64,000 nucleotides of DNA from Tubulanus polymorphus (taxonomy: Eukaryota > Animalia > Nemertea): the NCBI RefSeq assembly GCF_964204645.1, contig NC_134034.1, positions 186,001 to 250,000 on the forward strand, given 5' to 3'. Both the position numbers and the translations under genes were made by a program. Below are positions 29,471-53,424 of the stretch, piece after piece. The notes under the pieces were generated by a model. It was not told the DNA's origin and ran no database searches. It was given only the letters and a program-made list of their open reading frames with translations. The number at the start of each line of letters is the position of its first letter. The first letter of the stretch is position 1.

Positions 29471-29700
29471 CAGCGTGAGGGGACCCGCTCGTCCTGATAG
29501 CGTGAGGGGACCCGCTCGTCCTGACAGCGCGAGGGGACCCGCTCGTACTGACAGCGTGAGGGGACCCACCCGCTCGTACTGACAGCGTGAGGGGACCCAC
29601 TCGCTCGTACTGACAGCGTGAGGGGACCCGCTCGCTCGTACTGACAGCGTGAGGGGACCCGCTCGTCCTGACAGCGTGAGCTGACCCACTCGCTCGTCCT
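29471..29700. repeat. 27-31-bp minisatellite (CTGACAGCGTGAGGGGACCCGCTCGT)
   Basis: About 8 units. Confidence 0.9.
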
Positions 29701-32098: not shown

Positions 32099-32912
32099 TC
32101 TGATAACATAGACCTGTATAACATGGATCACTAATCAACAATCCGGGGTTCCTTCTATCAAAGTAACTGATTAAACAGACACATACGCAGACGGGAATCC
32201 TGTTTTTATTCCGCTGTGACCAGACGTCTTTTTCCGCCACGCCAGTCTCATCCATCGTCAATCCATTCTCTTTTCTTCTCTCAACCGTAGAATAGAAGCG
32301 AGTTCGCGGTAAGCATCAATCTGATAAATTATTTCAACTGTCCAGGGGCGCAGACCGACTACACAGATCTTATCATTATGATTAAGTTTATTCTTCCGCC
32401 GATTCTGCGGATTTTCTTCGGTTTCTTTTCGCCGAACAACTCCTCGCGACGACAAAGGTTTGCTCCGAAAATAAACAAGTTATGAGAGCCAGCCTTCGTC
32501 ATGGGAATCCAACCGAATCGTTGTATTTTGGGTTAATGCGGGATTCGAACCGAATCGAGATGTAAAGCGCACGTGTTCATCAATCACTCGCTTTATTGAC
32601 AATGTTGTGATTCGTGTTAATTTGTACAAAGATACTTCAATTATGAAAATGTGCAATTTCCGGAAAATCGTTTCATGCAGAACAAATAGATCATTTCATT
32701 GCGCTCTCGCTCTCGCGCAGTTCTCGCGATATCCCTCGAGAACTCTACACTGAAACAACCGAACGCGATCCAAATGGATGTCTCTGGATTTAGATTCACA
32801 GTTGTGTGGTTTTAATTCGTGTATCCAATGTCTTTGCATCTGAATCAAACCCGCACAAATCGTATTAAAATTAGACCCACGCAGGAGTATTGGATTGGAT
32901 CTAATCCTGGCT

Positions 32913-33198
32913 CAACTGTGGAACTGGGTCCACAGTGAAAATAAACCCACACAACTGTGGAACTGGATTCAGAGTCAAATTAAACCCACACAACTGTGGA
33001 ACTGGATTCAGAGTCAAATTAAACCCACACAACTGTGGAACTGGGTTCAGAGTCAAATTAAACCCACACAACTGTGGAACTGGGTTCAGAGTACAATTAA
33101 ACCCACACAACTGTGGAACTGGATTCAGAGTCAAACTAAACCCACACAACTGTGGAACTGGGTTCCGAGTCAAACTAAACCCACTCAACTGTGGAACT
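32913..33198. repeat. 39-bp satellite array
   Basis: About 7 units. Confidence 0.95.
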
Positions 33199-34617
33199 AT
33201 ATGCTTTTATTGTCAGTACATACCCGCACGCATCCTTGCAATGCAAGCACGCAAACACGCACACAAACACGCACACATTGTAGGCTTCAACATTACGTAT
33301 GGTTTTTGTCACATCAATATTGTACAAATTGATTGGTCTGTTTGAACTTGTATATAGATACACCGTGGAGAGAGAGAGAGAGGACCGACAGATATACGAA
33401 ATGGAAATCGATTAACTTTCAAACATCTGTCGACGTCCCTTCTCCGTCAAATCACATTCGGGGATTTACAAACATATTCTGCTGACCTGCTGTACTACTG
33501 CACATCACTATCTGATTACATCTCCTGCTGTTCTATTGAACACTAGATATCTCTTTCGATCTCTCATCGCGCGTTCTTTTCAAAAACAACGCCAATTTTT
33601 TTCGGGAAATTATTCTTTTGAATTTCTCTTTGATGTCGCCGCCCAAGCGCCAGGAGATTGGATTTAGATGCACTGAAATTGCCTATGATTTTCCAAAACC
33701 TTTACAATTGGCTTCTTTTATACGACGCTCAAGCTCTGCGGGCCGAATACTTATTTCGAAATGTTTATTTCTTTGTGCCCATGGCTTCTCCTCCGTTCAC
33801 CCTAATACACCTCGTTCGACTCCTCATCCCGATATCGTATCCACTGTGGATCTAAGTGGATAGCCCGTTAAACGATAGTAATTTTGATCCACTTCAGTCG
33901 TGGTGTATATAACGACGTGTATTATTGCGTGAGAGTCCTTTCAAAAAATATTTTATATCATCTGGCAAGTGACGTCATCAGTCACTGTGATCTTTCGTTA
34001 TTGTGTGTGTCACAGTGTGTATTAGTACGCGTGTGCTCAGCGATTTGCGAGGCGCTACTTTTATCTGATGCGTGGCACTGGAGTGAAGTTTCAGGCGACA
34101 CCTCGCGCAGGCGCAGTCGCTCGAGTAGGAGATTTATAAACGGATCGTCCACTTTTCCCGTGAATTGAAGTTTTAAACCTTTTCTAACATGGAATAAAAC
34201 CTAGCTGCCTTAAATTGAAAGGATTTCGTTGGTAAGAATTTATTTTTATTTTTCAATTATTTATGAAACGAACTTTTGGAATTAATGAAAAATTTGGAAT
34301 AAGTTATAACTGATTTATTTCTTATCTAATTTCACCCGATCTTCACAAAGCATTCGATAAAGTAATATCAGCTGAAGAGTGATTATTGTTCAATTACTTG
34401 ACGCCTAGTGGTTTTGAAGTTTGAACCGGGACATTTTCAAATCTAAAATGACTTTTGATTAATTTTTATTGTCTTGAAGGCGTTCGATAAGGTCGTTCGC
34501 AAAATACCGCTCAGTCCAGAGCCTTATGAGAAGAAAACCTACGTAATAAGACTGGTTATTAGAAACTGAACCTGGAAATCAGTTGATTATTGTTGAGTGA
34601 CCAAAATATTGTGTGAA

Positions 34618-39045: not shown

Positions 39046-42000
39046 ATGCCCGGAATGTTTGCACGAAGGCGCAGTTTGATAATTAAAGTGGTCGTGTTGA
39101 TTCCTATGCTGTGGTTCGCGGCTGTGCTGGTATACTCATTCAGCGACCACACTATCGACCCAGCGCCCCCTGGCGGCGGACCGCGTAAAATTCCGCCGTT
39201 ACAACGCGAAGCGCGCGTGCAGAATATGGACCAAGCGGGTGAGGCGCCCCCTGGCGGTCACGCGGGTGGTAGTGATAGCGAGAAAGATATAGGTATCAAA
39301 GTGGATAGCTTTTTAGGGCAGCATTTAGGGCGTAATGGACTGCAGGGTTTGCGTAAACAACAGATCGGGGATAGGGTTGCCAGGAATATACCGGTATTCC
39401 TGGGTCAACCGTTAAACGGGAATATAATTCAGAACATTCCCGATAACAAGGACCAGCAGCAGCAGCAGGAGGAGAAGATGTTTATAAATAAACCTGTTAA
39501 AATCGATGAATCGAAGAAAACAACCAGAAACTTAAGCGCTCCAGGTAAGACAAAGAATCATATAAATACCCTTCTAGAAAGGTGGCAGGAAACATGGCTG
39601 CCTCCATAGACCATTCTGGAAGACATGTCAGAAAACACGGCTGCCTCCATAGACCATTCTGGAAGACATGTCAGAAAACATGGCTGCCTCCATAGACCAT
39701 TCTGGAAGACATGTCAGAAAACATGGCTGCCTCCATAGACCATTCTGGAAGACATGTCAGAAAACATGGCTGCCTCCATAGACCATTCTGGAAGACATGT
39801 CAGAAAACATGGCTGCCTCCATAGACCATTCTGGAAGACATGTCAGAAAACATGGCTGCCTCCATAGACCATTCTGGAAGACATGTCAGAAAACATGGCT
39901 GCCTCCATAGACCATTCTCAAAAACATGTCAGAAAACATGGCTGCCTCAATAGACCATTCTGGAAAGCATCAGAAAGTATGACAGTCTCAGCAACCGCCA
40001 TAGATTCTTCCAGAAAACACGACAAACACTCTCAATTGTGAACTTTGTTCGCGATGATGGCATTTTGTTCTGACCTTTTAAACATTAATCCATATTTCTA
40101 TGTTTATTCGTGTTTTCTGCACTATTTATTTTCGCCGCAGGTGAAATGGGAAAACCGGTCGTCATTGACAAGGAGAAGTTAAACCCGACTGAACGCGCTA
40201 GATTCGATCGATTGTGGAAGGAGAATGCGTTTAACGGTTACGCCAGTGAAATGATCTCTTTACATAGAAGTTTACCTGATGTGAGAGATAGAGAGTGAGT
40301 ATGAAGTGTCTACCAGTCGTCGTGCTCGGGGGGGGGGGGGGGTCAATATGTGTGAGCGTCGCGGGTGTTTGAGATTTGACTGGATTCACAATCAAATTAA
40401 ACCCACACAACTGTGGAACTGGGTTCCGCAGAGTCAAATTAAACTCACACAACTGTGAAACTGGGTTCAGAGTCAAAGTAAACCCACACAACTGTGGAAC
40501 TGGGTTCAGAGTCAAATCAATCCCACACAACTGTGGAACTGGGTTCCGCAGAGTCAAACTAAACCCACACAACTGTGGAACTGGGTTCCGCAGAGTCAAA
40601 CTAAACCCACACAACTGTGGAACTGGGTTCCGCAGAGTCAAACTAAACCCACACAACTGTGGAACTGGATTCAGAGTCAAAGTAAACCCACACAACTGTG
40701 GAACTGGGTTCAGAGTCAAATCAATCCCACACAACTGTGGAACTGGGTTCCGCAGAGTCAAATTAAACTCACACAACTGTGGAACTGGGTTCAGAGTCAA
40801 ATCAATCCCACACAACTGTGGAACTGGGTTCAGAGTCAAATCAAACCCACACAACTGTGGAACTAGGTCCAGAGTCAAATCAATCCCACACAACTGTGGA
40901 ACTGGGTTCAGAGTCAAATCAATCCCACACAACTGTGGAACTGGGTACAGAGTCAAATCAATCCCACACAACTGTGGAACTGGGTTCCGCAGAGTCAAAC
41001 TAAACCCACACAACTGTGGAACTGGGTCAAGAGTCCACGCAACAACTAAAGAATTGTCGAACTGTGGAATTGTGGTATATTTGGAATATTGTAGCAGCAG
41101 CATGTCACCATCCTCCTCTAAACCTATAACCGTATGTAACATGTAACCGTGCGCATGCGCGCTAACTGACACCCTGAAGGTATCACGCGATTGCGAGACG
41201 CAGACGACTCGAGTTTGAATCGATAGAAATTTCCGTGATAAACAGAAATATGAAATATGAGTGATTTTTATCACGTATTCAATCAAATTACGGCTTGATT
41301 TACTGTCAGTTTTATTGATAATTCTTTTCATATTTTATAGATTTGAATTCGTCTATTTGAAATGTAACCGTCACAAAGACAAGGCCGCCAGTTATTTATA
41401 TATCATATTCAAAATTAGCTGCGAGGGGAATTTCATTAAGTATGAAATATTAGCTTCGTGTTTAGCACAATGTTGGAAATCGCGCCTTCGTTGTTGAATA
41501 AAAAATATTCTAGACAGAAATAAAGTATTTCTGGCATTCACGATTGTGGTTCGTGAAAAAAAAATTCATGTCGCATTTTCTGCGTCAATGTATGAGATCT
41601 TATCAAATGCGCCCCCTTCCTCCCTTCCCCAGCACCCCAGAGAGATAGGGAGGAATAAATCCTAATCTGAGCACCCTGAAGGAAATGCTCACCAGCGGAC
41701 CAGGACCCAGTTCGACAATCTCAGTCTGACCTGACCTGACCCTATAAAATACACTAGCAGCGAAAGATGGTAATTTCTAATAAAATCAGTACGCAGTATT
41801 CACCATCAGTCTCAGTATAACCGACACTCATCCTCGGTGTCAGTCACGTTTATTCTATTTTACAGATGCAGAGATATAAAATATCACGACAACCTTCCAG
41901 ATACAAGTGTTATTATCTGTTTCCACAATGAAGCTTGGTCTGCGTTATTGAGAACAGTACACAGCGTACTGGACAGGTCTCCTCCACATCTTATTAAAGA

Positions 42001-45000
42001 AATTCTACTCATCGACGATTATTCAAACATGGGTAAGTTTTATTGAACCCTCTGTCAGCTTCTAGTTGCGCAGTCGTGAATTAGGAGATCTTAAATCTTA
42101 AGACTGGTCTTAAGTTGTTAGATTGGCTATAGAACTGAGTTGGTCTTAGACTGGTCTTAAGTCTAAGCCCTGACTATGCAACTGGCCCCTGACGGTTGTA
42201 CAGTCATGGCTTAGACAGTCTAAGACCGGTCTTAGACCAACTGAGTTCTATAGCCAAACTAACAACCTAAGACCAGTCTTAAGGTTTAGGACGACCTTTG
42301 GACTTAAGTCACGAATTTGAAAGTGGGTTCTGAACTAAGATGGTCTTAAACCTGTCTGATTAAGCCATGAGTGTGTGCAACTGATTCAAAATCAACAGAG
42401 ATCCATGAAATGAATGGTTTGTAAACATCTGGACACGTTGAGACGAGACGACTGTTTAACACGTTCCAGAGTACCTGGAGTCGTCCCGCCTAGCGAGTGT
42501 ACAGTCCGCACGGTCCGCACGGTCCACACGGCCGGTAGGATCCACACTACTGTATTAACCCTATTTCTTCATAGCTATTTCAGAATTCCAATTGATTTTT
42601 TAGAACATTTAAAATCGCCGTTAGACGAATACGTAGCTAAACTGGGCAAAGTGAAAGTAGTGCGTGCGAAACGACGTGAAGGATTAATACGCGCTCGGTT
42701 ACTCGGTGCTTCGGTCGCTACAGGGACGGTTCTCACTTATCTAGACTCGCATTGCGAATGCGCAGAAGGTACGACAGAATTTTCGTCATAATTTTAAACA
42801 TTCGATTTTCTGGAGATTAATTTTATCGTCATGAAATTGTTGGAAAAATTCTTTTAAAATGAATGCTGGGTAATGACTGGTTATGAGCGGGTCTACACAA
42901 TGTCCCAAATGTTTTAGAAGTAAATTCCAATTCTTGTTCTTGAACAATTTTTCCCCCAAAATTTCTACTGCTGTACAAAACTCTAAACATCTTTTAGTCG
43001 TCGTTCCTTAATGAGTAAAACTAGTCTCGAAGCTTTAAAGCTTATAGTGAAATTCCTGAGCTTAGATTTAGGCCTTAAACCCAAACCTGGCTACTTTTAT
43101 CCAATATCCCTCCTAGACCCAGTTCGGAATTAAACCCACATCATTGTGAGACCGCCTGCGGTCCTGATCTCGTGGTTTCCTGAGAGGACGATGATACTAG
43201 ATGCAATGAATGAAATACAGATGGTCTCCGCACAGTGTTTTAAATGGTTGACTGATTTTCAGGCTGGTTAGAACCGATGTTAGATCGGATAGCGATCAGT
43301 AAGTCTAATGTAGTATGTCCGGTAATCGATGTCCTCGATGACGACACTTTAAAGTTCAACTACGCCAGCGCCAAACACACGAGTGTCGGCGGTTTCGACT
43401 GGAATCTACAGTTCAACTGGCACTCTATTCCCGACCACGAAATGCGCCGTCGGCCGACAGAGGTCGCTCCGCTAAGGTAGCGTTAAGTGTTTAGTACATG
43501 TTTAGTTTGTGCTTGCGACCCGTGATTTCGAGTGAGACAGAATTTGAGACCGATTTTTCTTCTAATCGCTTTTTGATTTTTCATTGTTTGGTGGTTGTTC
43601 ATTCATATTCATTACACGGTTGTACTTCCCTTGAATGAAGACCTTGATCTGTGGAAAAAATGGCTGCCTTTATGAATTACCAAATGACAGGTCTGATGGA
43701 TATGCAGATTGTAGCTTTAATGGACATTCAGATTGTTCCTCTGATGGACATCCAGATTGTTCCTCTGATGGACATCCAGATTGTTACTCTGATGGACATC
43801 CAGATTGTACCTCTGATGGACATCCAGATTGTACCTCTGATGGACATCCAGATTGTACCATTGATGGACACATCCTGTAATGTAGGCAGCCATGTTTTCT
43901 GTAGATTTTCTGTAGGTTTCCCTTTATATAAACCTCACTCATTGTTATTTCACATCTGTTTCACTTCTTCAAATCGTTTCATCTATAGCATGAATGCATG
44001 TTGTACACACTGTATATCAGTATATTGTCATCTTTTACGTTTTGCATGCCTACAAAATGTCTTTAAGTAAAACTCAATTCTACTTCTGTTTATATTTACT
44101 TGTGGGATGTCCTTATATTGTGGGACATCTATGTATTGTGGGACATCTTTATATTGTGGGACATCTATGTATTCGTTACTAATGTTGGTAGTTGGTGTCT
44201 AATGAGTTGCTCCTTTTCTCTCCCAATTCAGCATCTGTTCATCCTGTTGATATTGGAACTCATCACGCTCCACCTGATAGTTTCACCCCTCTCACGATGT
44301 GGTAGTTGGGCCTCGACGGACAACCAAAAATCATGAAATCTTTCACAAAATTCTCCATTTCTTCTTCACCTCCAGTTCCTTATATGTTTCCCTAAAAATC
44401 TCGATTTCCTAGAATACAAGAAGTGAAGGCTTTTCTTTACGTTCCCGGATACATTTAATGATATTCTTCTATCCAGACTCTGTCCCACAGGTGGCGTGGC
44501 TGTGTCTACTGTTTCACTGCATCCTCCCTCGACAGGGGGCGTGTCTGTCTCTCCTGCCTCAGTGCATCCTCCCTCGACAGGGGGCGTGTCTGTCTCTATC
44601 GTTGTTGGGTTTACGGTGCAATCTATCCTCTGTTCACAGACGACATTTAATACAGACGTTATCGACTTGATGAGTCGCTTGCCAGTGCCGCTTTCGTATT
44701 GTTGATCGGATGGCGCGAGAGTTTTCCGCTCAGAGACGACTTGATTATTGGTGGATTTTTTTTAGAAATGGCGGTATTTTATTCATTATTGATTTCAGTC
44801 CATGTGTCGTGATATTTTAGCTTCCATGCAGCCATGTAGTTGTTAGATGCTACACTCATCCCGTAGAGTTAGAAACAAGGTTTTTGTTCAGGGAATTTAG
44901 AATTTTTCGCTTTTCTCCTAATAACAGTTGTATTCCAGGTTCAGCTTTTACGATTTGTCGATGTCAACACAACAAAAACTTCATTTAAAACAGAAAAAAC

Positions 45001-48000
45001 ATTTTGATTAAATCTCAGAGAGGGAACTCGGTTTAGGGTCAGTAACTCGAAAGTTGATTAAAGTTTGTGGCCGTTACAGCCGTTAAAAATTCAAAATTCA
45101 TTGTAGCAATTCTAAATGTCATCTTGCCAGAATTGACCCACTTGGACCAGTTGCATAGAGTCGTGATGATCTTGAAGATTGCTATATTTGTCATAGATTG
45201 GTCCACGCAATGACTGTGCAACCGGCCCCTGATAAGATTTAACCAATTTCCGAGTAACACTGATCCCTGTTTAGAATTGTTTCATTCTAAGATTTTTAAT
45301 TTTCGTCGTTCGAGCTCATTGTTTATGGTTTTAAGGTGGCGGTGTTTTTTTGTAAACAATTCCATAAACACAGATATCATCAAACCACAAACACATAAAC
45401 ACCTGGGGCCACAGGGCAAACACTCAGCGTCTGTAACGTGTATAGAGAGAATTCTAAACAGTTGAGATTGATGAATATTTACAGGGTGGCTGGAACCACT
45501 TTTAGATCCAATGTCGAACAGTACAAGCGCCGTTACAGCCCCGATTATCAACACGATAAGTGACGACACTTTCGCGTTTATCGGAGGTGCTTTCTATAAC
45601 AATATTGTCGGCGGGTTTCACATACATACCATGCAGTTTGACTGGGTTACCATGCAGTCTATTGAGAAGACTCGACGCGCTGAACTCGGTCTGCAGCCGT
45701 TTAGACCGATTAGGTGAGAGATACAGAGAGATATATCTATAGGTGTATCGGTCTGACTAACGGTATTAGTTATTCTTAGGAATCGGACTTCTCTTCGGCA
45801 TGATCTATACCGGGTTCAGTTCCACAGTTTGGGTCCGATTAGATTTAGGTCCTAGAGACTCAGATTCAACTAACATTTAATCCCTTTATTCCTAAACACG
45901 GCTTAAATATCGCGGACATTCTTTACACCTAAACCTCGCTTGTTATAGATGACACCTTGAAACACAAACATTAGGGATCGCCACAGCAGTGAGGGGAGTT
46001 CATCGAACTCCAGTGCCTGTTCTAGTCGCTAGGGGTCACCAGAGTTGTGAAAGGATGAGCAATGACCTGTAATTCAGACCCAGGACCTCCTGCTCCTGGG
46101 GTCTGGGATTCCCCTGCTCCTGTAACAGCGCCATCTATGATCGGATAACACTTTAAAATGTTACAGGCTGGTTGGAACCTCTTCTCGATCGAATCGCTAG
46201 AAACTGGACGACTTCCGTCTGTCCGGTTATTGACGTCATAGATATGGAAAACTTACGGTTCGCGTACTCCGGGGCGAAGTTCACTCAAAAGGGAATATTC
46301 AGACTCTCTGATATGATATTTAATTGGTCACCGTTAACGCAACATGATCGCTCTTACATGAAAGCGTTTACAGACCCGATAAGGTAGGCCCCATAACCTA
46401 GTCTCCTAGCTGTGCGTGATTACACACTTTCTTACCTAACCCCATATATATTATTCACAAAGCTAATTATTGATTAACCGCTTCAGTATTTAGCTGACAT
46501 AAAACAATAAATGACTACAGACTTAATTAAATAACTTTCTCATTCTCAATAACATCAACAAACTTGATTTATTTTCATTAAACGAACGATTAGTGATTAA
46601 CTCAATAACAAAAAACTAATCATTTCTCTAACTAACTTCACCACACTTTATCTGCCGTCATAATGACCGGTTGTTAATGGCAACCAGTATTTTCATGAAT
46701 AATTCTATCAAATGCTTTGTGAAACTCAGTGCTGTTTTTGCAGTTTGTGGCCGCTAGAGGCGAGAGTGTTCGCCACCATCGCTTCCCCTAACGGTCATGA
46801 ACTGCACTTATCTTTGCTATATACATGGAGTAGAGGTTAGGAAAGAAAGTTGTGAGTTTTTCACGACGGCATTCAACCACTCTAAATGGAGATTCGGGCT
46901 TCACGAAAATTCCAGTCCTTCCTGATTAAATAACACCTCGGTGTATAGATACCTCAATAACACCGGCCATCTTGGATATGGCTATTGCACGGACCCAACC
47001 CGAGTCACTCTAATCCCCGGGGATCCACCACTACAATGACCAGGTACAAATACCTGGTTTATCACGATACATATAACCTATAACCAACCTACTGGGACCT
47101 GCAACATCTCACAACACATTTCAATTATTCCCAATTCGCGCTCTCTATAGTTTGACCTCTGCTGAATCCATGGCCCCTTCTTGTTACGCCCTCACCCTGA
47201 TTACCCTTCACATTTCTTCCTAAGCCTAGCGTCGATCGGATTCTCATCTATGTTTACCGCTAGGTATCGCTTCGCACGCCATCTCCTTATCAACCGGTTT
47301 TCCCGTGACGTAGACAACGCTCTTTCCCTCATTGATAACGAGGGTTCTATGAGTAGGTGGCGCTTGTAGACGGTGGAAGGTTTTTTCTTCATATTCATGT
47401 TTTCATTTCATCTGTCGCTTCCTTGTCTCTGTTTGCAAAATAATTAATTCAAAATCGCTAATTACAATTAACTAATTATCATAATCATAATTGACTTATT
47501 ATCATAATTTCATGTAGATATATCATATTCTAATATATCATAATTCAAATACGTATCAATCTAATTCAATATTAATTTCACGTATATTTAGATTAACTAA
47601 GTACTGAATGAATGTATTGAGAATGTAGTCACAGTCTTTATGTGGGTCATATATAAACAACCCACAATATCAACGACGCTTATAATAGATTGCAAATATC
47701 CACCAATCATCACGTATTTGATTAAATATTTTCAAATAAAGAACGATAAAGAGAGATCTTTAGTGAAGCATTCTATCTAAAACATCGTCACTGAATTCTA
47801 TCACAAACATCAGTGAAACTGGATTTTCTGATTTTTACGGGTTGTTCAATGATACTGTGGGTTGTTTTATATAACTAGCGTCGTCTTGAACATGTAATAA
47901 ATTGTAAATTAAGACGATATTTTGTGGTATTCTGTTAATCAGGTCTCCGACAATGGCGGGCGGATTATTCGCCATTCATCGGCAGTATTTCGAGTATCTC

Positions 48001-50621
48001 GGTACATACGACCCCGGTATGGACATCTGGGGCGGTGAAAATCTAGAGTTATCATTCAAGGTAAATAAATTAATATACAACAAAATCGAAAACTTCCTCC
48101 GTTCCTCGCGGAATGTTCCCTAAGAGAACAGTGTTTATATATATGTGAATATGTTTGTTGTAGATCTGGATGTGCGGCGGTACATTAGAGATCATTCCCT
48201 GTTCACATGTGGGGCATATATTTCGTAAAAGAAGTCCGTACTCGTGGGGCACCGGGGGTAACGTCGTGAAAAAGAATTCCGTCCGAGTCGCCGAGGTCTG
48301 GTTGGACGACTATAAAAAGTATTACTACGAACGTTTTAATAATGATTTGGTAAGTTTTTTCAGAGATCAGAGCAAAGAATCAGTTTTATAGGAATTACTC
48401 CATTCTGGAATCAGTTGAACAGTCGTGGTTTAATTTCGAAGGTGATTGATTATAAATCCATGTAGGGACTGGTTTTAAGTTGTTACATTGATTATAGACC
48501 TAAAATCTGCTTAGACTTGTCTTTGAAAAAGCCATGATTGTTCACCTGGTCAACACACTTATACCAGAATAAGAAAGTTTTAAGTCTGAAGCACGTTGGT
48601 TGTTCTGCAGTGTGTTTGTGTTTTTAGGGTGATTACGGCGATGTTTCAGCACGACGAGAATTGAGGAAACGTCTAAAGTGTAAAACATTTGATTGGTACG
48701 TGAAGAACGTATACCCGGATCTATTCGTACCAGGAGAGTCGATAGCTTCCGGCGAGGTGAGTAATACTAGCGACACCTAGCGGACCATCGTATTCTATTC
48801 TATTACTGGCGTCACCTAGCGGACCTTCGTATACGACTTCTGAGTTCACACTAACGCCGCCTAGTGGATCCTATATAAACTATTGTGATGTGTTTATTTA
48901 CAGATCAGAAGTGGTGAAACGGCTCAGTGTTTGGATGCGTCAGTCGATCACCCGGGTTCTACTCCACTGAAACTGTGGCCTTGTCATAGACAGGGCGGTA
49001 ATCAGGTACACGGTAACCAAGTATGTGTCGTTGTTTTCTAAGGCTAAAATCTGGAAACAGGAATATTAGACCCTCTCTACAAAGATGTCCGCCTCCTTAA
49101 AATACACCATGACGTCATTGGCCTCCGATGAGCTATTTGCATACTGTTTCGTAAAACGATTCTGTGACGTCATTGGGTGATTGATAGAGGCGGCCATCTT
49201 TACGCAAAACGGTCTAAACTATACATCACATCTAGAAGGAGAACATATCCCCACTTGCCAGGGGTTAGTTTCGTTCAGTGCGGCACGTGCGAGGTTACTG
49301 CGGTAAGTGGGGATACGGTGGAACACTATAACCCGTACTTCTCGGTAAGGACTATTTCTCGGTATTTCTAAAAGGACGAGTAGCCTATAATAGATAGATA
49401 TTTTACTCAATTCTTGGTGATTGAATTTTGATGCATGTTATTTTTAGCCTTAGAAACTTCGCACACCTTTTTATTTTCGTTTCTACTAGAATCCTAGTCC
49501 ATGCTAGACTAGTACAAATCTATGCTACAATGGGGAAGTGACTAGTCACCACTTATAGTGTCATACTAGTTCTATTTCTAGTCTGGTACTTTGCAGGCCT
49601 AAAAGTATGGCGTCTAACCCTAGGCAACGTCATAACTTAGCATGACATATGTCCTCTTCTTCGCGTCCGTTATACAGTCGAAAACATACATTCCAAACAT
49701 TTATACCTATTTTACAGTTTTACCAAAATGGCTGCTAATGAAAATATGGCTGACACGTGTTTTTATTTTCAGTTTTGGTTGCTAAGTAAAAAGGGCGAAA
49801 TCAGACGTGACGACGGTTGCTATGACTACACTGGTTCCGGCGATGTCACGATATTCAGTTGCCATGGGCAACACGGTAATCAGGATTGGAGATATAGAGA
49901 GGTTAGTGGGTAACGATATTAACATGGGCCACACTCGTCGAGCAGTTGCAGCAGTTGCTGAAAAGTTGGTTGAAAATAACCCCCGGATAAATAACATAGT
50001 AACATAACTTATATTGTCACTATGACAACGATCTACCGATTAACTGTAACCAACTATTGAGCAACTGGTTCCCAGTCGATACTTAAATCCAAGAATGGTC
50101 TCTAATCTTAAGACTGGTCATATAAAATGGGTTATAGAATTAAGTCTAAGCTATGACTATGGAACCGGCTCCTGGTCCCTTGTCTTGACTAACACCGCCC
50201 CCTGGCGGGTTAACTGATTGAAAATTAAGAATCAATTGCTGAAACGGCATCTAGAATTCCCGTCAGTTCTATTTTAGAAATCTCGATTACAATACAACTT
50301 CACACATATAGAATCACAATGAATCTTAATCTAGTATTTGATAAATCGTGATCTGTCGCGGGGAATTTATTCACGTTGTTTGACAACCTAGAAATAGGCA
50401 TATAATGCCTCCCGTTGGTTGTAACCGATACGATCCGATACGATACGATACGATACGATATTGTTTCGTTCCAGGACAATCGTTTGTACCACACTTCGTC
50501 TGGAATGTGCCTCGAAATGAGCTCCGACCATAAAAAACTGCTCATGAAATCGTGCGACACTTCGAATCGATTACAGGTGTGGCTTTGGAAGAGAAAAACA
50601 CCAGATACTCACATCTCGTGA
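39046..50621 (+). CDS. GALNT: Polypeptide N-acetylgalactosaminyltransferase (GT27; pgant9/gly-5-like), ~669-674 aa; exons 39046-39544, 40141-40294, 41866-42032, 42604-42768, [43263-43476 | 45485-45713 | 46167-46383], 47943-48060, 48164-48349, 48628-48756, 48904-49005, 49773-49901, 50475-50621
   Basis: Type II signal anchor after RRR. GT-A motifs: [64 protein letters not shown]-terminal ricin-B lectin (CLD...[10 protein letters not shown]). All junctions are GT-AG and in phase. Confidence 0.96.
39589..39965. repeat. 43-bp intronic minisatellite (AAAACATGGCTGCCTCCATAGACCATTCTGGAAGACATGTCAG), ~9 copies
   Basis: Near-identical units. Confidence 0.95.
40395..41035. repeat. 39/42-bp satellite array in GALNT intron 2
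   Basis: About 16 units. Confidence 0.95.
43263..43476 (+). CDS. GALNT: GALNT alternative exon 5a (canonical)
   Basis: WLEPMLDRI...VVCPVIDV...[12 protein letters not shown]...APLR; 214 nt. Confidence 0.93.
43691..43872. repeat. 24-bp minisatellite (CTGATGGACATCCAGATTGTWCCT)
   Basis: About 7 units. Confidence 0.9.
45485..45713 (+). CDS. GALNT: GALNT alternative exon 5b (divergent)
   Basis: WLEPLLDPM...VTAPIINTI...[13 protein letters not shown]...RPIR; 229 nt; intact AG/GT and no stops. Confidence 0.85.
46167..46383 (+). CDS. GALNT: GALNT alternative exon 5c
   Basis: [12 protein letters not shown]...SVCPVIDVI...[13 protein letters not shown]...DPIR; 217 nt; intact AG/GT. Confidence 0.88.
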
Positions 50622-50943: not shown

Positions 50944-51016
50944 GGTCCTGTGGCCCAATGGATAAGGCATCTGACTACGAATCAGGGGATTCCAGGTTCG
51001 AGTCCTGGCAGGATCG
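50944..51016 (+). tRNA. tRNA-Arg-ACG: tRNA-Arg (anticodon ACG)
   Basis: 73-nt cloverleaf: acceptor GGTCCTG/CAGGATC, anticodon arm TCTGA-CTACGAA-TCAGG, T arm CCAGG-TTCGAGT-CCTGG. A T-run terminator lies at ~51024-51032. Confidence 0.96.
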
Positions 51017-52395
51017 CTCTACCTTTTTTTTCCTGCGATAGGTTTTGGTTATTTTTGCCTTTATATTTACCGTTTCTTTTTGCTTATTACAAATTGTCAT
51101 TCCAAGTATGAGTGATTGTAAAGTCTCCCCCGAGAGTCCCGCGGCCACCTGTTACCCCTCCCCCTATGAGAGATTGTAGAGTCTCTCCCGACTCCTGTCT
51201 CTCCCTGACTCCTGTTACCCCTCCCTCTCATTTATCTCAATACTGCGAGGTTTTAACGGTTGAGCTCATAGCGGTAAATGTATTACTTAAACAAAACCCA
51301 ACCAATTATTATTTAAATCGCATGTACTTAATTATTCAATAGATTTTTATCCATTTTTCTGTTCCAACTTAATTTTCTAATATATAGCTACTGGTGACCG
51401 TGACCTTGCCCAAACCTCCCACCTCCTCCTCCCTACTCTCCTCCTCCTCTGCCTCCCTCCTCCTCCTCCTCCCCTTCTCCGCCCCTCCTCCGCCCCTCCT
51501 CCTCCTCCACTCCCCTCCACTGTCGTTATCTCATTATATACGTCTTTGTCACCGCAATATTTACTAGAAGGTTGTGGTTTAAATTCTATTGCTCAAACAT
51601 ACAACACCCTCTTCAAGGCTTTTCATCTACAATAGAAGACCCTTCTAGGAAAACATGGCCGCCTTGTAAATCCCCCTATGACGTCATCAACAAATTGATG
51701 ATACGATACGCAATTAATGCGCCGTGATTTCGATATCGCCGCCTGGTGTCAAGATCGGTAACTATACGTTATACCGGGATTTCGCACTAGTCGCCATTTT
51801 GATTTGATGATGTCATATCGGGGATTCCATCCAGGAAGTGTCTATATACATGTGTGTGTATGGTAACTCTTATAAAGTGTAAATATTGATCGATTCTGTT
51901 TCAAAAAAGGAAAAATTAGGAAAATGTAAATTGATGAATAAAATAATTCCATACAGTAAAACAAAAAGCTATCTTGTCGGTGTCTTCGATGGATTTATCG
52001 GATTTTTTTCCATAATTCAGTGAAATCGTTTTTTATAAAAAGCTGCATTAAAAATTAAAACAGAAAACAACATTAAATCCAATTCTACTGACGATTTTAT
52101 TGTCTCTGCATTTGGAAAATTGATATTGGGAAATTGAAATTTTAAAATGATTGCGATATTTGTAATTATTTTTGTTTTAATTTGCTGATTGTAACGTTAT
52201 GAAAGTCGAGTGATTTATTTACAAAAACCACCGATCCATCATATCGGTGTCCGATCCGTATCGATGTCCGATCCGTACCGGTGGCTGATCCGTACCGGTG
52301 GCTGATCCGTACCGGTGTCCGATTCTAGTTTAGTTTATATCAGTGAAAAGAACTAATTTGATGAAATCAAGCGTGATCCACTATAAGTGTAAAGT

Positions 52396-53424
52396 TTATC
52401 CCTCGAAAGCCGACTGTCCAAAACTGAAGCTCTCTTTACGTGTCTCACCGGAATCTACGACCACTTCCGGTTCCGGTATCGGGGAATCATCTCGTTTTAG
52501 GTTCTCTAGTGAGTAAGCGGGTGGTGGAGAGGCAGGGGGCGGGGAGGGTGACTTCCTAACCCCCTCTTCACTGGCACTGTCCGTCTTCTCCGGTTTTGCG
52601 TTCGGACGTTGTTGGCCTTGACCTTGGTACGCCGGCGGTTGACCGCTCATGACGACTATGATTGGCTCTTGACTGACACGTGACCGACAACACGTCACCT
52701 GGCAACAATAGGCGGCCTGTACGATAGCGACGACCATTTCAAATAAGAGAAAGAATCCAAGCACGCAATGGACGGCTATGGCGCTTCTCCCCGGCCATCT
52801 TCTTTTCTTCCAGTCACCATGGTCACGATCTTTATTTTTACGGTCGTCACGGTCGTGCATTGTTGATGACGAATCTTGCGTTGTTGAACCGGTAGGTGTC
52901 GCCGTGGTCGTCGAGGAATGATCGTGACGATCCTTCCAATCATCCCAAAGATCACCGGATTTCTTTATTCCATCATAGTCTGCTCTGTAGTTCATATTCT
53001 GTTGACGATAGATGGCGGCACTGGTCACTAGAATCAGACCGCACGTGACAGCCGCTATTATACAGAACACCAGACACGTGATCAGGAAGCATCGTTTCTT
53101 CTCGCGGCCGGCGATACCGAAAGCGCCCCCTAGGATGAACAAGATACTAGCGCCCCCTGCGATACCGCCGTAACACGCGTATCCACCACGACTGGCTAGA
53201 TACCCGCCGAGTACGATAGCCAGGATACCGATAATAATCTGTATGCTACCCATAGCTGTATGAGCCTTGTAATATTTCACCGGATCTGTAGACATACATG
53301 AGTTTCCTGTATCTGTTTCAGTGACCGGTGTTTTCTGACTGGGCTTACGAGTAACGGGTGGTGACTGGACCGGTCCCCAGGCCTCCGGGGTGTCGGGTAT
53401 GAGCACTTTCTTATCAAAACCCAT
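52396..53424 (-). CDS. MS4A/CD20-like four-TM protein, paralogue A (342 aa, intronless CDS)
   Basis: Four hydrophobic helices with a CD20-family-like pattern (GSIQIIIG; FILGGAFGI; E-containing TM4 followed by CC). Pro-rich tail with PPAY x2. The ATG at 53424 follows a 5'-UTR acceptor. Confidence 0.8.
   Translation of the reverse strand: MGFDKKVLIPDTPEAWGPVQSPPVTRKPSQKTPVTETDTGNSCMSTDPVKYYKAHTAMGSIQIIIGILAIVLGGYLASRGGYACYGGIAGGASILFILGGAFGIAGREKKRCFLITCLVFCIIAAVTCGLILVTSAAIYRQQNMNYRADYDGIKKSGDLWDDWKDRHDHSSTTTATPTGSTTQDSSSTMHDRDDRKNKDRDHGDWKKRRWPGRSAIAVHCVLGFFLLFEMVVAIVQAAYCCQVTCCRSRVSQEPIIVVMSGQPPAYQGQGQQRPNAKPEKTDSASEEGVRKSPSPPPASPPPAYSLENLKRDDSPIPEPEVVVDSGETRKESFSFGQSAFEG

What the first reader, a model, noticed from the sequence alone, without database searches (positions are those of the whole stretch)
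43263..46383. Three mutually exclusive exons swap the acceptor-binding segment of a GalNAc-T catalytic domain
Three tandem paralogous exons (214, 229, 217 nt) each begin (G)WLEP and end P-[LI]-R. All have intact splice sites, identical phases and no stops. Each length is 1 mod 3, so including none, two or all three shifts the frame, and exactly one must be used. The exon encodes the region after the DxH motif, including the GGFDW...FxW segment that lines the peptide-acceptor groove in GT27 enzymes. FxW is kept in all three, while its surroundings differ sharply ([11 protein letters not shown] / [12 protein letters not shown] / [12 protein letters not shown]), and 5b also loses the VCP cysteine. 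The exon switching I know of in Drosophila pgant9 affects the lectin alpha repeat, which is single-copy here. The inference is that one gene produces three O-glycosylation initiators with different substrate specificity.
Basis: partly seen in the sequence, partly recalled or inferred. Interest (0 to 1): 0.85.

Follow-up and report, generated by a model that had tools for sequence, protein, structure and literature searches.

The report
Swappable exons in an O-glycosylation enzyme
This marine worm's gene for an enzyme that starts sugar chains on proteins holds three either/or versions of the piece that grips the target protein, and the same piece is multiplied 2 to at least 13 times in the matching gene of an annelid, shrimp, woodlice, water fleas and insects, a pattern for which I found no paper.

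Summary
Observation confirmed. The gene is the pgant9/gly-5-type GalNAc-transferase (11-exon model, 39046-50621). Exons 5a/5b/5c are intact, share phases, and only single inclusion keeps the frame. They encode the stretch that in human GalNAc-T2 holds the peptide contacts V255, L270, F280, W282 and Y284. Synonymous sites are saturated while frames survive, so the copies are old and selected. No RNA run could be laid here, so splicing in this species is not shown.

The cluster is not unique. The orthologue has 7 copies in Owenia, at least 13 in Halocaridina and in Diaphorina, at least 5 in Armadillidium, and 2 in Daphnia and Ladona. RefSeq already lists one-exon-each isoforms for Daphnia and Planococcus. 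Arthropod copies have a different 3' border, which suggests independent origin. A lineage-specific duplicate gene in this genome keeps only a 5b-like exon. 5b and 5c carry a one-residue insertion and lack a near-invariant Trp, so altered or reduced activity are both possible.

Splicing switches of GalNAc-T specificity are known (pgant9 lectin, pgant5 flexible loop); I found no paper on this segment or these arrays. The scan's notes (this genome only) had no earlier finding on it. New variant of a known kind.

The parts
39046..39544 (+). First coding exon: short cytoplasmic tail, transmembrane anchor, stem
   Evidence: ATG-to-GT open frame with hydrophobic stretch; joins in frame to the rest
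40141..40294 (+). Constant exon 2 (end of stem, start of catalytic domain)
41866..42032 (+). Constant exon 3 (GT-A fold, UDP-binding part)
42604..42768 (+). Constant exon 4, ends just after the DxH metal motif
43263..43476 (+). Alternative exon 5a, canonical type (GGFDW...FNW), 214 nt
   Evidence: up to 71% identical to canonical exons of orthologues
45485..45713 (+). Alternative exon 5b, most divergent, 229 nt; one-residue insertion, no Trp at the T2-276 position; nearest relative is the single exon of the in-genome paralog
46167..46383 (+). Alternative exon 5c, 217 nt; GIF instead of GGF, same insertion and Trp loss
47943..48060 (+). Constant exon 6 (SPTMAGG...WGGEN, Gal/GalNAc-T motif)
48164..48349 (+). 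Constant exon 7 (third metal His, flexible loop); single copy
48628..48756 (+). Constant exon 8 (end of catalytic domain, linker)
48904..49005 (+). Lectin alpha-repeat exon, single copy (the one switched in fly pgant9)
49773..49901 (+). Lectin beta-repeat exon
50475..50621 (+). Last coding exon, lectin gamma repeat and stop

Best explanation
A functional cluster of tandem-duplicated, mutually exclusive exons in the pgant9/gly-5 orthologue. Each mRNA takes one of 5a, 5b or 5c between constant exons 4 and 6. mRNAs with none or several carry an early stop and are probably removed by nonsense-mediated decay; choice is probably set by tissue-specific splicing factors. The three enzymes share the metal and UDP-GalNAc machinery, flexible loop and lectin domain, but differ in one wall of the peptide groove (T2 residues 233-301). 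5a is the general-purpose form; 5b and 5c most likely prefer other acceptor peptides such as particular mucins. Shown: anatomy, frame logic, selection, orthologous clusters, annotated isoforms in arthropods. Inferred: splicing in this species, NMD, tissue control, specificity differences.
For: Frame and stop positions. pS 0.74-0.87 (saturated) against pN 0.38-0.57, and second codon positions best kept. Neutral survival of one intact exon at distance 0.7 is 0.1-0.4% in simulation. Flanking introns share no similarity. Same-border clusters in Owenia (7), L013 (at least 4), L015 (2). All 35 arthropod copies examined are open with AG/GT and 2 mod 3. D. pulex RefSeq X1/X3 and X2/X4 map onto two tandem genomic exons, one each; D. 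magna and Planococcus isoforms differ in the same segment. T2 peptide contacts lie in this exon (PMC4432651). Across arrays the scaffold columns are fixed and the loop before GGF is hypervariable. One residue in a spliced catalytic segment shifts PGANT5 specificity (PMC12776162).
Against: No RNA run holds the stretch. No close relative of 5b in the protein collection (that search sees only 41-131 aa proteins). 5b and 5c break two features kept in nearly all of 208 homologous segments: spacing before FxW (208/208) and Trp (206/208). 5b and 5c have the weakest polypyrimidine tracts of the gene (0.41, 0.45). No enzyme data for any catalytic-exon isoform of pgant9.
Confidence: 0.72

Rival explanations
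1. 5b and 5c are spliced in but give weak or inactive enzymes that act as lectin-bearing binders, competitors or an off switch, rather than enzymes with new specificity.
For: Both lose the near-invariant Trp and gain a residue just before FxW; 5b is the longest branch of the exon tree.
Against: F280 and W282 equivalents and all scaffold columns are kept. The duplicate gene that has only the b-type exon keeps its DxH motif, WGGEN, third His and lectin exons intact, as expected of a working enzyme. Some Diaphorina, Halocaridina and Owenia copies also lack the Trp.
Confidence: 0.13
2. 5b and 5c serve as poison exons: co-inclusion with 5a sends the mRNA to decay and tunes enzyme level; their protein sequence does not matter.
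For: Any double inclusion gives a stop 814-1031 nt before the last junction.
Against: Poison exons need no open frame, yet both keep frame, in-frame indels only, and amino-acid constraint with saturated synonymous sites.
Confidence: 0.04
3. 5b and 5c are unused relics of tandem duplication that drift neutrally.
For: No RNA evidence here; weaker acceptors; Lamellibrachia and Elysia orthologues manage with one exon.
Against: Chance of staying intact at this divergence is under 1% per exon. The only listed variant in 5b/5c is synonymous (one site, not significant). The b-type exon is also kept in the paralog.
Confidence: 0.05
4. Same cluster, but choice is stochastic per cell and enforced by competing RNA pairings as in Dscam1, giving glycosylation diversity rather than tissue tuning.
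For: Arrays of 13+ copies in shrimp and psyllid resemble Dscam clusters in size, and frame alone cannot police them fully. One pairing between intron 4 (42867-42897) and the 5c donor region beat 40 of 40 shuffles.
Against: No site in either flanking intron pairs with both inner introns better than shuffles (14/15 and 4/15 shuffles as good), nor in Owenia (10/10, 1/10). The one strong pairing would loop out all three exons and is one of six tests.
Confidence: 0.06

Closest known systems
Drosophila pgant9 (CG30463) exon 8A/8B switch (Ji et al. 2018, PMC6115407)
   Same: Same orthologous gene; duplicated exons used one at a time; shown there to change peptide specificity by tissue.
   Different: The fly switch is in the lectin alpha repeat, which is single here; here the switch is inside the catalytic domain and has three options.
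Drosophila pgant5A/pgant5B (bioRxiv 2025, PMC12776162)
   Same: Alternative splicing of a catalytic-domain segment of a GalNAc-T that alters acceptor preference.
   Different: Other paralog (GalNAc-T1 orthologue) and other segment (residues 398-457, flexible loop and helix-turn-helix). The equivalent exon here (48164-48349) is single. Two forms with subtle differences, against three forms at about 40% identity.
C. elegans gly-5 exons 9a/9b/9c and gly-6 exons 8a/8b (PMC4165533)
   Same: Three homologous mutually exclusive exons in the nematode orthologue, verified by RT-PCR.
   Different: Those exons are 102-111 nt and 3n, matching the 102-nt lectin-alpha exon here (my inference from length and recall). 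They are partly excluded by very short introns; here introns are 2008 and 453 nt and frame does the policing.
RefSeq isoforms of pgant9 in Daphnia pulex (XP_046452904-910), D. magna and Planococcus citri
   Same: Same gene, same 5' exon border, alternative tandem exons used one at a time.
   Different: Arthropod exon is 143-164 nt and stops before FxW, so F280/W282/Y284 are constant there. Database annotation only; no paper found.
Dscam1 variable-exon clusters
   Same: Tandem arrays of homologous exons with fixed scaffold and hypervariable binding surface; the shrimp and psyllid arrays reach 13+.
   Different: An enzyme active-site wall rather than a recognition Ig domain; no docking/selector evidence; only three exons in this species.

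Membership tests
GT27 polypeptide GalNAc-transferase | Type II membrane anchor and stem | tested here: met
   Exon 39046-39544 encodes a basic tail, hydrophobic stretch and low-complexity stem
GT27 polypeptide GalNAc-transferase | GT-A domain with DxH plus third His, and WGGEN motif | tested here: met
   Motifs in constant exons 4, 6, 7
GT27 polypeptide GalNAc-transferase | C-terminal ricin-type lectin domain of three repeats | tested here: met
   Exons 48904-50621 match lectin repeats of orthologues
GT27 polypeptide GalNAc-transferase | Transfer of GalNAc to Ser/Thr by each isoform | not testable with these tools
   Needs enzyme assay
pgant9/gly-5 orthologue group | Groups with fly pgant9 and nematode gly-5 against vertebrate T4/T12 | tested here: met
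   Best solved-structure hit of 5a and 5c is PGANT9; constant-exon tree 99/97 (outgroup limited to two rows); the genome's T1-type gene is elsewhere (L004)
Mutually exclusive tandem-duplicated exon cluster | Adjacent homologous exons with same phases and intact splice sites | tested here: met
Mutually exclusive tandem-duplicated exon cluster | Each exon keeps the frame alone; co-inclusion is barred or destroyed | tested here: met
Mutually exclusive tandem-duplicated exon cluster | mRNAs of this species that hold exactly one exon of the cluster | tested here: inconclusive
   No RNA run holds the stretch; shown only for orthologues by annotation
Dscam1-type docking/selector system | One docking site complementary to a selector at each alternative exon | tested here: inconclusive
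   Nothing above shuffles in window or Owenia; no close species for conservation test
pgant9 lectin-alpha switch | Duplicated lectin alpha-repeat exon | tested here: not met
   Single exon 48904-49005
pgant5A/B flexible-loop switch | Duplicated exon for the flexible loop and helix-turn-helix | tested here: not met
   One GHIFR-type exon in the window

The most novel reading that the evidence does not exclude
Protostome pgant9 has repeatedly, and independently in arthropods and spiralians, turned the exon for one wall of its peptide groove into a variable cassette array (3 here, 7 in Owenia, 13+ in shrimp and psyllid, multiplied by the lectin-alpha switch in arthropods). One gene then stands in for a family of O-glycosylation initiators, the splicing counterpart of the 20-gene vertebrate GALNT family. 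Single cassettes can later be fixed in duplicate genes, as the b-only paralog here suggests.
Probability: 0.5. Interest if true: 0.85.

Novelty: new variant of a known kind. Interest (0 to 1): 0.68.

Why it matters
Which proteins and sites receive mucin-type O-glycans is decided by the set of GalNAc-Ts in a cell, and how acceptor preference is written in the catalytic domain is only partly understood. These clusters are natural experiments: dozens of alternative groove walls on an otherwise identical enzyme, which can be assayed side by side. They also mean that invertebrate GalNAc-T repertoires are undercounted; automatic gene models of the shrimp, woodlouse and psyllid loci are garbled (P0001, P0004, P0079). 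The b-only paralog is a candidate case of a splice form fixed by gene duplication.

Tried and rejected
RNA evidence: five runs offered, none on record as RNA; the one guessed RNA run laid a single 44-nt unrelated piece, no joints. A 5b-only homologue search found nothing (limited to short proteins). Docking/selector search by inverted repeats and duplex energies gave nothing shared by both inner introns. AU tests could not separate ancient from lineage-specific origin of 5b/5c (p 0.19-0.74 for six hypotheses). Assembly artefact rejected (no intron similarity). Steric exclusion unlikely (introns 2008 and 453 nt). No U12-type donor seen. A fourth copy was not found in the gene. Nine literature searches found no paper on this segment or the arrays; the library lacks most subscription journals.
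Full report
Observation. Each has an AG acceptor, a GT donor, phase 1 at entry, phase 2 at exit and no stop. I traced the whole gene from ATG 39046 to the stop at 50621. With exactly one of the three it encodes 669, 674 or 670 aa. With none, two or three it stops 560-1031 nt before the last exon junction, a typical decay substrate. The introns around the copies share no similarity beyond the first codons of the exons. DNA contigs from two samples cover the cluster, and the deepest run is even over 5a-5c. The cluster is real and not an assembly duplication. Exons were joined only inside local scripts (frame checks, a concatenated constant-exon alignment for the tree).

Identity of the gene. It is a GT27 polypeptide GalNAc-transferase with membrane anchor, DxH motif, WGGEN motif, third His and three lectin repeats. 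5a and 5c hit Drosophila PGANT9 best among solved structures (E 6e-23 and 4e-12); 5b is weaker (about 1e-5). On constant exons the gene sits with fly pgant9 and nematode gly-5 (99/97 against a two-row T4/T12 outgroup), next to annelid sequences (83/91, open). An earlier AI note names the genome as the ribbon worm Tubulanus polymorphus; I did not verify this beyond the spiralian placement.

What the exon encodes. It aligns to residues 233-301 of human GalNAc-T2. In T2, V255, L270, F280, W282 and Y284 form part of the hydrophobic peptide pocket, and W282A nearly abolishes activity (PMC4432651). All five lie in this exon. By alignment 5a/5b/5c have V/T/V at 255, S/I/Q at about 270, F and W unchanged, and S/T/P at 284. 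The metal ligands, the WGGEN motif, F361 and the flexible loop are in constant exons. So the switch replaces one wall of the acceptor groove and leaves the chemistry alone. 5b and 5c share a one-residue insertion between GxF and FxW and lack the Trp equivalent to T2 W276. Among 208 distinct homologous segments gathered here, all have the shorter spacing and 206 have the Trp (the set is biased to pgant9-like hits).

Selection. Between any two of the three exons synonymous sites are saturated (pS 0.77-0.87) while pN is 0.41-0.57, and second codon positions are best kept. A simulated neutral exon stays intact (frame, splice sites, no stop) in 0.1-0.4% of runs at distance 0.7 and in under 6% even at 0.3. 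The only listed variant in 5b or 5c is synonymous, against 11 in the adjoining introns of the same contig; this alone is not significant.

A duplicate gene with only the b-type exon. At G000:C10:1674736 lies a complete paralog with the same exon layout and a single exon 5. On constant exons it is sister to the window gene (100/99). Its exon 5 groups with 5b (94/93) and shares GGFH, the insertion, FDW and QSxE. The simplest reading is that the gene duplicated when the cluster already existed and the copy kept only b. This also shows the b type is old and protein-coding. Long-branch attraction cannot be excluded on 70 columns.

The cluster in other animals. A profile of the three exons returned mis-predicted proteins with repeated WLEP segments. 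Their loci hold tandem arrays: Halocaridina rubra 13 (contig ends), Diaphorina citri 13 (the canonical copy lies outside the fetched stretch), Armadillidium vulgare 5 (partial), Ladona fulva 2, Daphnia pulex 2. All 35 copies are open, AG/GT-bounded and 2 mod 3. Protein models of Ephemera, Blattella and Timema also show two copies. Some copies look orthologous between shrimp and woodlouse (83% identity for the last copy). With exactly the window's borders, Owenia fusiformis has 7 copies, an unnamed marine contig at least 4, another 2; Lamellibrachia, Elysia and one unnamed contig have one. In the arrays the scaffold columns are fixed and the loop before GGF (5a positions 32-40, around T2 262-270) is most variable. 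RefSeq isoforms of D. pulex use one or the other of its two genomic exons, in all four combinations with the lectin-alpha switch; D. magna and Planococcus citri isoforms differ likewise, and Logan contigs of transcript size carry complete forms. This is annotation, not my own read evidence, but it shows the design is spliced as predicted in orthologues.

Origin. Arthropod copies end before FxW and share the next exon; spiralian copies each carry their own FxW. The duplicated unit differs, so at least two independent origins are likely (inference). Within spiralians, 5c groups with the six divergent Owenia exons (94/95), which would make it very old. But 5b and 5c share an insertion that Owenia lacks, the canonical exon is first here and last in Owenia, and AU tests reject neither history. 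Unresolved.

How exclusivity works. The inner introns are 2008 and 453 nt, too long for simple steric blocking, and no donor looks U12-type. No site in a flanking intron pairs with both inner introns better than shuffled sequence, here or in Owenia. One pairing, 42867-42897 with the 5c donor region, beat 40 shuffles but would skip all three exons and was one of six tests. I therefore favour regulated exon choice by splicing factors with decay of mis-spliced products; this is inference. The weaker acceptors of 5b and 5c fit a default 5a with induced alternatives.

Comparison with what is known. Splicing switches in GalNAc-Ts are established: fly pgant9 lectin alpha exon 8A/8B (PMC6115407), worm gly-5 and gly-6 clusters (PMC4165533), GALNT13/Pgant5/gly-5 listed as recurrent tandem-exon genes (PMC9741552), and fly pgant5A/B, where a spliced catalytic segment changes specificity (PMC12776162). 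This case works like pgant5A/B in principle but is a different gene and segment. It is in the same gene as the fly switch but lacks that switch. Nine searches of the open literature found nothing on this exon or on the large arrays; RefSeq holds two-exon cases without comment.

Verdict. Real, old, selected, and very probably spliced one at a time. Splicing in this species and the functional difference are untested. New variant of a known kind; the breadth and size of the arrays in relatives are the surprising part. Interest 0.68.

Noticed in passing
G000:C10:1673700-1677400 (L006, L021): Complete lineage-specific paralog of this gene with a single, 5b-like exon 5; candidate for a splice form fixed by gene duplication.
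   Followed up: yes
L009:3275-20540 (Halocaridina rubra) and L012:4621-16380 (Diaphorina citri): Arrays of at least 13 intact tandem catalytic-domain exons each in pgant9; public gene models there are garbled. RNA use not tested.
   Followed up: partly
L018:18596-23352 (Owenia fusiformis): Seven tandem copies with the window's borders; six divergent GIF/GAF-type copies precede the canonical one, which alone is in the annotated protein.
   Followed up: partly
L012:26968-27105 and 29567-29698 (Diaphorina citri): Two alternative last exons for the lectin gamma repeat in the same gene.
   Followed up: no
L010:18574-26596 (Ladona fulva): Lectin-alpha exons recur in identical blocks about 3 kb apart; probably an assembly duplication on top of the real A/B pair.
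   Followed up: no
window 42867-42897 with 46384-46410: Complementary stretch between intron 4 and the 5c donor region, about -29 kcal/mol, better than 40 of 40 shuffles; would mask the 5c donor or loop out the cluster. One of six tests, no conservation data.
   Followed up: partly
window 50944-51017: tRNA-Arg(ACG) gene about 320 nt after the stop codon.
   Followed up: no
window 39590-39960, 40385-41040, 43692-43870, 44100-44172: Minisatellite arrays (units of about 39, 30-33, 18 and 21 nt) in the introns; the 30-33-nt unit also occurs near 32900-33200.
   Followed up: no
window 52600-53420, minus strand: Long open frame with hydrophobic, membrane-like stretches followed by a charged low-complexity tail, read by eye only; a neighbouring gene.
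   Followed up: no
G000:C10 (L002, L004, L005, L006 and the window): Five GalNAc-T genes of different subfamilies lie on the same chromosome-scale contig.
   Followed up: no
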